The notes under the pieces were generated by a model. The model was not told the DNA's origin and did not search any database. It was given only the letters and a program-made list of their open reading frames with translations. Both the position numbers and the translations under genes were made by a program. Below, one piece after another: positions 21,740 through 24,496 of a stretch of 64,000 nt of DNA (position 1 is the first letter of the stretch; the number at the start of each line of letters is the position of its first letter). The stretch is from Salisapilia sapeloensis CBS 127946 (Eukaryota; Protista; Oomycota), in assembly GCA_023334545.1 (NCBI GenBank), contig JAADVB010000066.1, positions 1 through 64,000 of the forward strand. The letters run 5' to 3'.

Positions 21740-24496
21740 CTACTCGCTAGCTTTTACATCCTCCACGTCCTTCCCATCCTCTTCTTCTACGTCCATCGCC
21801 TTTCCATCTTCCACTACCTCCTTAGTCACCTCAGGTTCAGCAGCCGCTTCCTCCGTCTTCTCCACCGTCATCGCTTCGTCCTTTGCAGTCGTATCCTTGG
21901 CATCCTCTTCCATAGCCCCGTCGCCATCACTTGGCTTCTCTTCCTCCTGGAACAACTCGTCTCTGTATCTAGGACACTTGTCCAGTAGCTTTTCAAAAGT
22001 CACTCGACTCGCTTCCCACACGTCGCTTTCCCACAGCTTTGTAAAAGTATCCACACTTGCACACGTGCGCCTCAAGTGTCCAATCGTCTGCTTCAAATAC
22101 GTCTCGATCACATCTTCCTTTCCACTCTTCATCTCGACAACCGACCACAGCAACATCCCTACCTTTCCAAATATTGCTTCCTGCGAATACACGACGACTT
22201 CCTCACCACTTTCATCCCACTTAAACTCAATCTCTTGTTCCGCAAGACAGAGTAAAAAGTCATCCATGATAACCTTCCACACACTCGTCTTTACAACATC
22301 TTCCAACTTTGTACTCTGCATCCGTTTCACATGTCCAAGTAACACTTCGCCAACATCATGTAAGAAGACACGATCTTGCGCCATGCTAGTTTCTACCTCC
22401 ATCAGACACTGGATCATCCGTCCACCAACATCAAACGCATTTTCCACGAGACACTTGAGAATAAACGTCTTGATCAACGTTCGAGACGATGCACTCGATA
22501 ACAACACATCCTTCCACACTTGACTTTCAAACGTCTCGAGTCGGTCCTGATGCATCCACGTCATCACGAGTGGCAGGGCGACTCGAATCGGAATCGCACC
22601 TGGTGCTTTCAAATGCATCTCCTTCTTGCGTACCATACGACGCAGTGATGCAGCGTTACCGAGTTGGAGTAACTGGACAAGACCACGGCAGTTCAAGTGG
22701 TCTGTCGGTAGCTCTTGCGTCGTCCAGCACGTCGCAAGTGTCTTTAGCAGCGTCTCGGAGATCAAACGTTGGGCTTGAGGATCACTCAAGACCATCGCGA
22801 CATCCGCAAGCTGGTCTTCACACACGCCTTCAGGGACGAAGCCAGCCACGGCGACGGCAGGGCGATGCAGCACGACTTCTCCAGACGTGGATAAGATGCC
22901 GACAGCTTCTCCTGGTCCCGTCTTCTTCCGTTTCTTCGGACGAAGCTTTTGTGGTGCGCCTTGTAGCGTCGCTGCGTGCTTTTCAATGACATCCAGTCCT
23001 CTCTTACCCACACGCTTGCCTTCTTTATAGAAGACAGTCGTGTCGGGATTAAAGGTGAGGCAGTTCTGGATCATCAGGTTAAAGTCATCCACAAGCATCT
23101 CGACCGACTTGTACTTGTGCTTTCGAGCTTTCTTACGCATGGTCGAGAGATCCATCGGCTCTTGGATCACTTCATGGTACTTGGGCACATCTGCCGGTAC
23201 AGGTTCAGCAAAGATCTGTTTCGAATCAATACGTACGAGCTTTTCAATCAACACATCTAACTGGTCGGATGGAGGTGCACCAAGCACCATTTCTAAAGCC
23301 TCTTCTTCCATCTGCATCTCCTCCGGTTTCTTCTTCAAACGACGATGAAATGGCAAGTCTCCAATACGAAGTTTATCCACGAATGATAGGAGCTCCTGAA
23401 GCTCCGTCGCATCTAATGCACTCTTCTTAATCGCTCGATCCGTGAACCAGATGAACTTGTGGATAGGATCTGTGCGAAGTAAGTTGGTTGCATGATCTCG
23501 TTGGACATTCGCTAGGTCAGCACGTAAGGCACCAAGCGTCGCGACACCGTCCACTAGATCCTGACTTTGTAGCTTGGCATTGTTATAGGAAAAACCAGGG
23601 ATAACACTAGAGATGAGGTACTCTTTCCAAATCTCGAGGACGGAGAGATATAGCTCTTCCGAGTCGCCGATCATGTCCGTGAGTTTACGCAATGCAGCGC
23701 TTGATTTACGACGTTCCTCGGACGATATACTCCATCCAAGTGGACGGTTGAGAGGAGTGCTAGAGGACGCTTTTGACGGGACGTGGCTCGATACGTTCCA
23801 CAAGTCCGAAGCTGCAGTCTCGATGCTACTCGTCGGTTGCTTGGATGCTTCTTCCGATTGGAACGGATGCGAGCGATAGAATGCCATGCGCTCTTCTGCA
23901 TACTCCCGCGTGCATTCGTCCACAAAGACACGTAGCTCGGCTGCATCTACGAATAAGATTTTACGCCGCACATGCGTCGGTAGAGCCTCCAGAATCTTTC
24001 GGTTCTCGGTCAGTTCCTTTAAATACGCTTCTGGCGTTTCTTCTTGTAAGGATAAAATCGTCATGGGTACTTGCTGCAGCTCCCGGAACTCAATGTAAGG
24101 GAATGTAGCGTCCAAGAGTTTCTGCAATTCCCGTTGGGAAAAATGCGGTAGGCGTTTGAGCAACTCTTGACGTAAAGCTGACAGCATAGACTCGTAGACA
24201 CTCGAACGTCGTACCGAAAGTAGATCTAAAAGCTGAATGGCAGACCCAAAGTTCTCTCCCTCTACGACACCATCTACGCCATGCGTTTTCTGGAAATCCA
24301 AGATGGCCGTGTCGGGATTCGGGGCCGTGCTAAGCAGTTCTTGGAGGGCAGCACCGCCACGAGCACCAATCATGCGTGGCTTCACCTTTTTCAGTTTCGT
24401 ATGCGCCTTGTTATTCTCCGTCATGTCGTTTTCAGACTTGTGCGTCGACAATTTAAACGTGACCTTCAAGTCACTCGTCGATGGGCTGTCGCTCAT
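21740..24496 (-). CDS. NELFB: Negative elongation factor B (COBRA1)-like protein with an internal bromodomain
   Basis: NELF-B blocks 'LQELLSTAPNPDTAILDFQKTHGV', 'LDATFPYIEFRELQQVPMTIL', 'LRADL…TDPIHKFIWFTD' and 'QLADVAMVLSDP'; bromodomain 'IFAEPVPADVPKYHEVIQEPMDLSTM…DFNLMIQNCLTFNPD'. Intronless; likely start MSDSPS at 24496. Confidence 0.85.
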   Translation of the reverse strand: MSDSPSTSDLKVTFKLSTHKSENDMTENNKAHTKLKKVKPRMIGARGGAALQELLSTAPNPDTAILDFQKTHGVDGVVEGENFGSAIQLLDLLSVRRSSVYESMLSALRQELLKRLPHFSQRELQKLLDATFPYIEFRELQQVPMTILSLQEETPEAYLKELTENRKILEALPTHVRRKILFVDAAELRVFVDECTREYAEERMAFYRSHPFQSEEASKQPTSSIETAASDLWNVSSHVPSKASSSTPLNRPLGWSISSEERRKSSAALRKLTDMIGDSEELYLSVLEIWKEYLISSVIPGFSYNNAKLQSQDLVDGVATLGALRADLANVQRDHATNLLRTDPIHKFIWFTDRAIKKSALDATELQELLSFVDKLRIGDLPFHRRLKKKPEEMQMEEEALEMVLGAPPSDQLDVLIEKLVRIDSKQIFAEPVPADVPKYHEVIQEPMDLSTMRKKARKHKYKSVEMLVDDFNLMIQNCLTFNPDTTVFYKEGKRVGKRGLDVIEKHAATLQGAPQKLRPKKRKKTGPGEAVGILSTSGEVVLHRPAVAVAGFVPEGVCEDQLADVAMVLSDPQAQRLISETLLKTLATCWTTQELPTDHLNCRGLVQLLQLGNAASLRRMVRKKEMHLKAPGAIPIRVALPLVMTWMHQDRLETFESQVWKDVLLSSASSRTLIKTFILKCLVENAFDVGGRMIQCLMEVETSMAQDRVFLHDVGEVLLGHVKRMQSTKLEDVVKTSVWKVIMDDFLLCLAEQEIEFKWDESGEEVVVYSQEAIFGKVGMLLWSVVEMKSGKEDVIETYLKQTIGHLRRTCASVDTFTKLWESDVWEASRVTFEKLLDKCPRYRDELFQEEEKPSDGDGAMEEDAKDTTAKDEAMTVEKTEEAAAEPEVTKEVVEDGKAMDVEEEDGKDVEDVKASE

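What the first reader, a model, noticed from the sequence alone, without database searches (positions are those of the whole stretch)
21740..24496. NELF-B (COBRA1) with a complete bromodomain inserted inside it: possible chromatin-coupled Pol II pausing factor
Seen: the protein is collinear with NELF-B on both sides of a ~190-aa insertion containing a canonical bromodomain (~22990-23265). The bromodomain keeps the acetyl-lysine pocket Tyr (KYHEVI) and Asn (CLTFNPD) and is flanked by basic stretches. As I recall the human sequence, 'ELQGFLDGVKKG' is followed almost directly by 'EQVLGDLSMILCDP'. Here 'ELQELLSFVDKLRIG' and 'EDQLADVAMVLSDP' are separated by the bromodomain, so this is an internal domain insertion in an uninterrupted ORF rather than a gene-model fusion. 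Established: NELF stabilises promoter-proximally paused Pol II in metazoans, and metazoan NELF-B has no reader domain. Inference: oomycetes may tether a NELF-like complex directly to acetylated +1 nucleosomes, an architecture I do not know to be described.
Basis: partly seen in the sequence, partly recalled or inferred. Interest (0 to 1): 0.82.

Follow-up and report, generated by a model that had tools for sequence, protein, structure and literature searches.

The report
NELF-B pausing factor with inserted bromodomain
This oomycete gene really does encode the NELF-B subunit of the RNA polymerase II pausing factor with an intact acetyl-lysine-reading bromodomain spliced into its middle, but the architecture is shared by stramenopiles in general, was already noted in a preprint supplement, and its function is still untested.

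Summary
Window 21740-24496 (minus strand) is one uninterrupted 918-aa ORF, and three RNA runs each give one unspliced transcript contig across it. The Pfam COBRA1 (NELF-B) profile matches on both sides of a ~180-aa insert and breaks between profile positions 187 and 189. An AlphaFold model aligns to human NELF-B over residues 37-848 (Z 34.6, 521 of 550 residues). The insert is a family-IV-like bromodomain (closest to BRPF1/BRD7/BRD9, Z 17.6) held on two flexible linkers. It keeps the pocket Tyr440 and Asn483 and is the most conserved block among oomycete orthologues.

- NELF-B and NELF-C/D are not metazoan-specific; Chivu et al. (bioRxiv 2023.02.19.529146) find them across eukaryotes.
- That paper's Supplementary Methods already state that all stramenopile NELF-B candidates carry a bromodomain, which they call "C-terminal", and that NELF-C/D carries WW domains.
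- The feature is therefore stramenopile-wide (oomycetes, labyrinthulomycetes, Cantina) and already noted.

Tethering a two-subunit core NELF to acetylated +1 nucleosomes is geometrically plausible, but it remains inference. The scan had also flagged this same stretch once before (s1-296267).

The parts
21706..24658 (-). mRNA extent (5'UTR ~160 nt, 3'UTR ~25-35 nt), unspliced
   Evidence: Single RNA contigs of 2930-2953 nt in runs X1, X2 and X4, with 0 gaps and 0-1 mismatches. Depth is 0 in the upstream intergenic region, and the neighbouring gene is spliced in the same runs.
21740..24496 (-). CDS, 918 aa plus stop codon; NELF-B (COBRA1) orthologue with internal bromodomain
   Evidence: The start ATG aligns with the Met of the orthologues.
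24389..24496 (-). aa 1-36, disordered N-terminal extension
   Evidence: pLDDT below 50; poorly conserved.
23342..24388 (-). aa 37-385, NELF-B N-terminal lobe (HEAT-like helices), with a Ser-rich disordered loop at about aa 217-255
   Evidence: phmmer to human NELF-B 8-168 and 237-293; COBRA1 profile up to position 187; structural alignment to human NELF-B.
23291..23341 (-). aa 386-402, linker 1 (RLKKKPEEMQMEEEALE), flexible
   Evidence: pLDDT below 50 at 386-388 and 394-402.
22949..23290 (-). aa 403-516, bromodomain (family-IV-like) with pocket residues Tyr440 (23177-23179), Asn483 (23048-23050) and shelf Phe429
   Evidence: PF00439 E 2e-21; BRPF1 Z 17.6, rmsd 2.2 A, 109 of 110 residues aligned; Y440, N483, F429, P432 and V433 invariant in 14 oomycete orthologues; most conserved block.
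22862..22948 (-). aa 517-545, linker 2 with a conserved basic patch KLRPKKRKK (NLS-like or nucleic-acid-binding)
   Evidence: K522, R523 and K525 invariant; pLDDT below 50 at 523-541; 8 K/R against 2 D/E in aa 512-545.
21947..22861 (-). aa 546-850, NELF-B middle and C-terminal lobe
   Evidence: COBRA1 profile 189-290 at aa 561-664; the model up to residue 848 aligns to human NELF-B up to residue 555.
21743..21946 (-). aa 851-918, acidic disordered tail (28 D/E in 68 aa)
   Evidence: variable and much longer in Phytophthora.

Best explanation
The gene encodes the stramenopile form of NELF-B, the scaffold subunit of the ancient two-subunit 'core' negative elongation factor (NELF-B plus NELF-C/D).

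Shown: the whole NELF-B helical-repeat fold is preserved. At the boundary between its N-terminal lobe and the middle 'hinge' region (equivalent to human residue ~293), a BRPF/BRD7/BRD9-like bromodomain is looped out on two flexible linkers of roughly 17 and 29 residues; the second linker carries a conserved basic KKRKK patch. The gene is transcribed as one unspliced mRNA. The acetyl-lysine pocket is invariant across oomycetes and is kept in Cantina.

Inferred: the protein pairs with the WW-domain-bearing NELF-C/D that the literature reports in oomycetes, and binds Pol II-DSIF as in animals. [quoted passage not shown] This would supply the nucleosome or downstream-DNA contact that the NELF-E basic helix provides in animals; NELF-E is absent from stramenopiles. 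The outcome would be recruitment or stabilisation of core NELF at acetylated, active promoters.
For: Identity:
- Pfam COBRA1 57.6 bits and Bromodomain 76 bits.
- COBRA1 profile split at positions 187/189.
- Human NELF-B phmmer hits.
- AF2 model with pLDDT 81.8 and pTM 0.74; it aligns to human NELF-B 6-555 at Z 34.6 over model residues 37-848, and to BRPF1 at Z 17.6.

A real, expressed gene: collinear RNA contigs.

Constraint:
- About 46 oomycete orthologues carry both domains.
- The bromodomain block has the highest column identity, 0.82.
- Y440 and N483 are invariant and retained in Cantina, Achlya and two metagenomic lineages.

Partner: NELF-C/D (TH1) candidates from Phytophthora sojae, Saprolegnia parasitica and Albugo are in the Chivu et al. 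supplement; there are no stramenopile entries in their final NELF-A or NELF-E sets.

Geometry:
- Human NELF-B 291-438 is proposed as a hinge (PMC4940160).
- The NELF-B/E lobe is the leading edge facing the +1 nucleosome, and the NELF-E basic helix contacts the nucleosome or DNA (PMC12462365).
Against: - No binding, interaction or pausing data exist for any stramenopile NELF-B.
- NELF-C/D was not located in this organism's genome, since only the 64-kb window was available.
- Whether oomycetes show promoter-proximal pausing is unknown here.
- The pocket Tyr next to the Asn (BRD4 Y139 position) is Phe482 in this protein. By my recollection this is tolerated in many bromodomains; it was not tested here.
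- The basic patch may simply be a nuclear localisation signal.
- Bromodomains also read non-histone acetyl-lysines.
- The C-terminal COBRA1 sequence match is weak (23.7 bits), so the C-lobe assignment rests mainly on the structural alignment of a predicted model.
Confidence: 0.55

Rival explanations
1. It is a genuine bromodomain-bearing NELF-B in a NELF-like complex, but the bromodomain does not read the +1 nucleosome. It reads an acetylated non-histone partner (for example an elongation factor or transcription factor), or serves as an intra-complex docking or localisation module together with the adjacent NLS-like patch.
For: Bromodomains of the same structural class sit in large complexes where they contribute to assembly, for example BRD7 in PBAF (row 50). 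The conserved KKRKK patch is a typical monopartite NLS.
Against: The closest solved relatives (BRPF1) are histone-tail readers, crystallised with H4K5acK8ac, H3K14ac, H4K12ac and H2AK5ac peptides. The NELF-B lobe faces the nucleosome in mammalian paused complexes.
Confidence: 0.25
2. The protein has left the pausing pathway. In stramenopiles the NELF-B scaffold plus bromodomain acts as a general chromatin or transcription cofactor independent of Pol II pausing; NELF-independent roles have been reported for mammalian NELF-B/COBRA1.
For: Ochrophytes retain NELF-C/D (91 candidates) with almost no NELF-B (1 candidate). This suggests the two subunits can be uncoupled in stramenopiles. A pausing-independent cytoplasmic role of NELF-B is reported in mammals (title of PMC10591015). 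The extra domains may reflect 'functional changes', in the words of Chivu et al..
Against: The full NELF-B fold is conserved at Z 34.6, including both lobes that contact NELF-C and NELF-E in human. Oomycetes keep NELF-C/D. Chivu et al. report higher pausing indices in species that have core NELF.
Confidence: 0.15
3. Artefact: the architecture comes from a gene-model or assembly fusion of two genes, or from a retained intron carrying a bromodomain exon.
For: None found.
Against: There is one uninterrupted ORF. Identical collinear RNA contigs come from three runs, while the neighbouring gene is spliced in the same runs. A related species' transcript also spans the bromodomain and the C lobe (X5). 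The same architecture occurs in about 50 independent genomes and transcriptomes.
Confidence: 0.01

Closest known systems
Human/metazoan NELF-B (COBRA1), e.g. PDB 8W8E chain V, 8JJ6 chain A, 9J0N chain V
   Same: Same helical-repeat fold end to end (model 37-848 aligned to human 6-555, Z 34.6, 521 of 550 residues). Sequence similarity is detectable in the N lobe (E ~4e-12) and through Pfam COBRA1 on both sides of the insert.
   Different: Only about 23% identity. A ~180-aa insert (linker, bromodomain, basic linker) follows the position equivalent to human residue 293. There is an extra disordered Ser-rich loop (aa 217-255) and an acidic tail. The partners NELF-A and NELF-E are not found in stramenopiles (literature).
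Stramenopile NELF-B candidates of Chivu et al. (bioRxiv 10.1101/2023.02.19.529146, Supplementary Methods, Table S1, files 92/93), including Phytophthora, Saprolegnia, Aurantiochytrium and Hondaea
   Same: Same family and same COBRA1 plus Bromodomain architecture. In Aurantiochytrium, COBRA1 stops at profile position 174 and the bromodomain follows at aa 400-482, which is the same break region.
   Different: They describe the bromodomain as 'C-terminal' and do not analyse it further. Here the NELF-B fold is shown to continue for about 300 residues after it, so it is an insertion. The window protein is a divergent orthologue, at most 46-50% identical to any database sequence.
Family IV bromodomains: BRPF1 (PDB 5FFW), BRD1, BRD7, BRD9
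   Same: Four-helix bundle, rmsd about 2 A over about 109 residues, 32-36% identity. The pocket Asn and the ZA-loop Tyr are conserved, along with the 'IFAEPV...VP.Y...I..PMDL' motifs.
   Different: It is embedded in a HEAT-like scaffold rather than next to PHD, PWWP or DUF3512 modules. Its family assignment is unresolved in my tree. Ligand unknown.
NELF-E basic helix of metazoan NELF
   Same: Proposed functional analogue only: an element of the NELF-B/E lobe that contacts the +1 nucleosome or downstream DNA.
   Different: No homology. NELF-E is a separate subunit with an RRM. The analogy is inference.

Membership tests
NELF-B / COBRA1 (PF06209) | Pfam COBRA1 profile match above the gathering threshold | tested here: met
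   57.6 bits against a cut-off of 22, E 1.4e-15, in 3 stretches.
NELF-B / COBRA1 (PF06209) | Homology on both sides of the insert (collinear with the profile) | tested here: met
   N piece matches profile 83-187 (40.3 bits). C piece matches profile 189-290 (23.7 bits, marginal). The structural alignment spans model 37-848.
NELF-B / COBRA1 (PF06209) | Full-length fold equivalent to solved human NELF-B | tested here: met
   Foldseek E 1.7e-13, TM-score by target 0.75. VIA-align Z 34.6, rmsd 4.3 A, 521 of 550 residues. This rests on a predicted model (pLDDT 81.8).
NELF-B / COBRA1 (PF06209) | A profile built from it retrieves proteins annotated as NELF-B in other eukaryotes | tested here: met
   The N-lobe profile finds 488 proteins. 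Among them are Anaeramoeba 'negative elongation factor complex member b', Salpingoeca 'Negative elongation factor B' and JGI 'negative elongation factor B'.
NELF complex (functional membership) | Partner subunit NELF-C/D (TH1, PF04858) encoded in the same genome | not testable with these tools
   Only a 64-kb window is available. The literature supplement lists TH1 candidates in Phytophthora sojae, Saprolegnia parasitica and Albugo spp..
NELF complex (functional membership) | Subunits NELF-A and NELF-E present (four-subunit metazoan-type NELF) | not tested
   Chivu et al. have no stramenopile sequences in their final NELF-A or NELF-E sets. At most this would be a two-subunit 'core' NELF.
NELF complex (functional membership) | Binds Pol II-DSIF and stabilises promoter-proximal pausing | not testable with these tools
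   Needs biochemistry and PRO-seq.
Bromodomain (PF00439) | Profile match and left-handed four-helix bundle | tested here: met
   76 bits, E 2e-21. Helices 410-423, 450-458, 465-482 and 488-506. BRPF1 Z 17.6, rmsd 2.2 A.
Bromodomain (PF00439) | Acetyl-lysine pocket residues: conserved Asn (BRD4 N140 position) and ZA-loop Tyr (BRD4 Y97 position) | tested here: met
   N483 and Y440 are present and invariant in 14 oomycete orthologues, and in the 8-sequence set that includes Cantina. The mapping to BRD4 numbering comes from my own knowledge of the family.
Bromodomain (PF00439) | Binds acetyl-lysine | not testable with these tools
   Needs peptide-binding assays.
Family IV bromodomains (BRPF/BRD7/BRD9/ATAD2) | Groups with family IV members in a phylogeny | tested here: inconclusive
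   The best sequence and structure hits are BRPF1, BRD1, BRD7 and BRD9. My small bromodomain tree is an unresolved polytomy with a BRD7-like sequence; TAF1 and BET types are clearly excluded.

The most novel reading that the evidence does not exclude
Heterotrophic stramenopiles run a minimal two-subunit NELF that makes up for the missing NELF-A and NELF-E with accreted reader modules. A hinge-inserted bromodomain plus basic patch on NELF-B would grip the acetylated +1 nucleosome. N-terminal WW domains on NELF-C/D would grip the (phospho-)Pol II CTD or Spt5. That would be an independently evolved, chromatin-mark-gated form of promoter-proximal pausing outside animals.
Probability: 0.25. Interest if true: 0.7.

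Novelty: new member of a known kind. Interest (0 to 1): 0.4.

Why it matters
Promoter-proximal pausing is usually treated as an animal innovation, and how paused Pol II senses the +1 nucleosome is an active question. A NELF scaffold with a built-in, strongly conserved acetyl-lysine reader at its nucleosome-facing lobe, in organisms that lack NELF-A and NELF-E, would be a natural experiment in how pausing machinery can be wired to chromatin marks. Oomycetes such as Phytophthora are genetically tractable enough to test it.

The architecture itself is not a discovery of this scan.
- The bromodomain is an insertion at the NELF-B hinge, not a C-terminal fusion.
- The transcript is collinear with the ORF.

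Tried and rejected
- phmmer of the C-terminal piece alone against PDB sequences found no NELF-B. The C-lobe assignment needed Pfam (marginal) and the structure model.
- A word-indexed homology search with an alignment of diverse bromodomain-NELF-B proteins was swamped by generic bromodomain proteins and returned only Cantina plus TAF1, ATAD2 and similar. It was uninformative for the census.
- The first tree attempts failed (a MAFFT timeout and a naming error).
- The final NELF-B tree puts Anaeramoeba as 'sister' to the oomycete clade and choanoflagellates next to Cantina. I treat these as long-branch noise, not history.
- The bromodomain-only tree is unresolved, so a single versus multiple origin of the insertion could not be decided.
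- The ESM Atlas look-up gave only weak scores, at most 0.67.
- Literature searches for COBRA1+Phytophthora and NELF+stramenopile found no main-text treatment.
- The search of earlier findings gave no NELF-C/D lead in this genome.
- Gene-fusion or retained-intron artefact: rejected on the RNA and conservation evidence.
- Degenerate 'pseudo-bromodomain': rejected because the pocket Asn and Tyr are invariant and the domain is the most conserved block.
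Full report
THE OBSERVATION. Window 21740-24532 on the minus strand is one uninterrupted reading frame. The first ATG is at 24496 and aligns with the initiator Met of the orthologues, giving a 918-aa protein with its stop at 21740-21742. 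Tyr440 of PKYHEVI is at nt 23177-23179 and Asn483 of NCLTFNPD is at nt 23048-23050.

Pfam finds Bromodomain (aa 416-493, 76 bits, E 2e-21) and COBRA1 (57.6 bits, E 1.4e-15, three stretches). Scanned as separate pieces, the N part matches COBRA1 profile positions 83-187, ending at aa 379. The C part matches positions 189-290, at aa 561-664. The family profile is therefore interrupted between two adjacent positions by about 180 residues. The C-side match is marginal in sequence terms: 23.7 bits against a cut-off of 22, and phmmer of that piece against PDB finds nothing. phmmer aligns aa 43-199 and 324-379 with human NELF-B 8-168 and 237-293.

IS IT A REAL, EXPRESSED, SINGLE GENE? Three RNA runs of the same organism each contain one contig of 2930-2953 nt. 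These contigs cover 21706/21719 to 24648/24658 with no gap and 0-1 mismatch. Depth falls to zero in the upstream intergenic region. A small neighbouring transcript shows spliced joints in the same runs, so these are RNA-derived contigs, not contaminating DNA. A run from a related species, about 95% identical, has a contig spanning the C lobe and the bromodomain. The refutation test 'transcripts that splice out the bromodomain' is therefore not met.

STRUCTURE. I built a 128-sequence alignment (oomycete orthologues plus remote NELF-B proteins). With it, AlphaFold2 gives a confident model: mean pLDDT 81.8 and pTM 0.74. Foldseek's five best PDB matches are all human NELF-B chains (E down to 1.7e-13, TM-score by target 0.68-0.77). 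VIA-align places model residues 37-848 on human NELF-B residues 6-555 with Z 34.6, rmsd 4.3 A and 521 of 550 residues aligned. The complete NELF-B fold is thus present on both sides of the insert.

Residues 402-516 superpose on the BRPF1 bromodomain (Z 17.6, rmsd 2.2 A, 109 of 110 residues); BRD1, BRD7 and BRD9 score almost as well. The two segments bracketing the bromodomain (386-402 and 523-541) have pLDDT below 50. Short strands at 377-379 and 557-559 lie at the two stumps. This is the picture expected of a domain looped out of a surface loop on flexible tethers. Vos et al. [quoted passage not shown] The insertion lies at that boundary.

CONSERVATION AND DISTRIBUTION. A database search found about 46 oomycete proteins that carry both Pfam domains. 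They come from Phytophthora, Peronospora, Bremia, Plasmopara, Hyaloperonospora, Peronosclerospora, Pythium, Globisporangium, Lagenidium and Albugo. None is more than 46-50% identical to the window protein, so the window comes from a divergent oomycete lineage. In a 14-sequence alignment the bromodomain block has the highest mean column identity: 0.82, against 0.75-0.77 for the COBRA1 parts. F429, P432, V433, Y440, N483 and the basic K522/R523/K525 are invariant.

An exhaustive profile search with the N lobe alone found 488 relatives. Among the 145 new representatives listed there, only four carry a bromodomain:
- Achlya hypogyna (Saprolegniales);
- two metagenomic proteins, P0078 and P0079, from compact eukaryotic contigs;
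- Cantina marsupialis, an opalozoan stramenopile.

In Cantina the bromodomain occupies the same junction. The amoebozoan Ceratiomyxa protein (P0082) and a second bromodomain-less relative of unrecorded organism (P0084) pass straight through that junction with no insert.

In a tree of NELF-B with the bromodomain masked, the oomycete, Achlya and metagenomic proteins form one clade with strong support. Cantina is a long, unplaced branch, so one origin of the insert is neither excluded nor shown. A bromodomain-only tree is likewise unresolved.

PRIOR KNOWLEDGE. Chivu et al. [quoted passage not shown] The main text does not mention a bromodomain. [quoted passage not shown] Table S1 repeats both notes.

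Their final candidate sets contain:
- NELF-B from Sagenista (6), oomycetes and other Gyrista (6), Opalozoa (1) and Ochrophyta (1);
- NELF-C/D from all four groups, including Phytophthora sojae, Saprolegnia parasitica and Albugo;
- no stramenopiles among the final NELF-A or NELF-E candidates.

In their Pfam output for Aurantiochytrium, COBRA1 ends at profile position 174 and the bromodomain follows at aa 400-482. That is the same break region as here, and it explains why they called the domain 'C-terminal'. Public annotations also show the architecture, for example 'putative bromodomain, cofactor of BRCA1' in Plasmopara halstedii. No paper in the searchable library discusses it in its main text.

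MECHANISM.
Shown: an expressed NELF-B with a pocket-intact bromodomain under strong constraint, tethered at the hinge.
From the literature: oomycetes encode the NELF-C/D partner. In mammalian paused complexes on nucleosomal templates the NELF-B/E lobe forms the leading edge that meets the +1 nucleosome, and NELF-E's basic helix contacts the nucleosome and downstream DNA (PMC12462365).
Inferred: in stramenopiles, which lack NELF-E, the bromodomain and the adjacent conserved basic patch on NELF-B provide the contact with the +1 nucleosome. They would do so in an acetylation-dependent way, recruiting or stabilising a two-subunit NELF at active promoters.

The rival readings cannot be excluded without experiments: a reader of a non-histone acetyl-lysine or an assembly and localisation module; or a pausing-independent cofactor role. 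The artefact explanation is excluded.

VERDICT. NELF outside animals is established, and the bromodomain-bearing NELF-B is a stramenopile-wide feature already recorded, briefly and only in a supplement. The window protein is a new, divergent member of that known kind. The functional hypothesis remains open, testable and moderately interesting.

Noticed in passing
window 21067-21507: A small spliced RNA contig lies just downstream of the gene. It has two introns of opposite polarity: 21135-21223 reads GT..AG on the minus strand and 21319-21384 reads GT..AG on the plus strand. Runs differ in an alternative splice site (21134 against 21139), and there is no long ORF in any frame. It could be overlapping convergent UTRs or a non-coding RNA merged by the assembler.
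   Followed up: partly
literature: Chivu et al. supplement files 99, 100, 142, 143: Stramenopile NELF-C/D (TH1) proteins, including those of Phytophthora sojae, Saprolegnia and Albugo, start with one or more WW domains. This is a second domain accretion on the same complex. An earlier scan note (s1-296388) reports tandem WW domains on the cap N7-methyltransferase of this same genome, hinting at wide use of WW modules on Pol II-coupled factors.
   Followed up: no
literature: Chivu et al. supplement files 92 and 99: Ochrophytes contribute 91 NELF-C/D candidates but only 1 NELF-B candidate. Heterotrophic stramenopiles keep both. Either NELF-B has been lost or it has diverged beyond detection in the photosynthetic lineages.
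   Followed up: no
L001:6001-8697 and L002:3450-5924: Two metagenomic proteins (P0078, 898 aa; P0079, 824 aa) form a deep sister lineage to the oomycete bromodomain-NELF-B clade. Both lie on compact contigs next to FH2 and PAH_ZNF598 genes (conserved neighbourhood). The organism is unknown.
   Followed up: partly
window 21743-21946 (aa 851-918) and P0026: The acidic, disordered C-terminal tail is short here. It is expanded to several hundred residues in Phytophthora and the downy mildews. In P. infestans it contains long, near-identical repeated blocks.
   Followed up: no
window 23732-23848 (aa 217-255): A Ser-rich, low-confidence loop interrupts the N lobe relative to human NELF-B. Its length varies among oomycetes, and it contains a conserved 'DLWNVSSH.PS' motif.
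   Followed up: no
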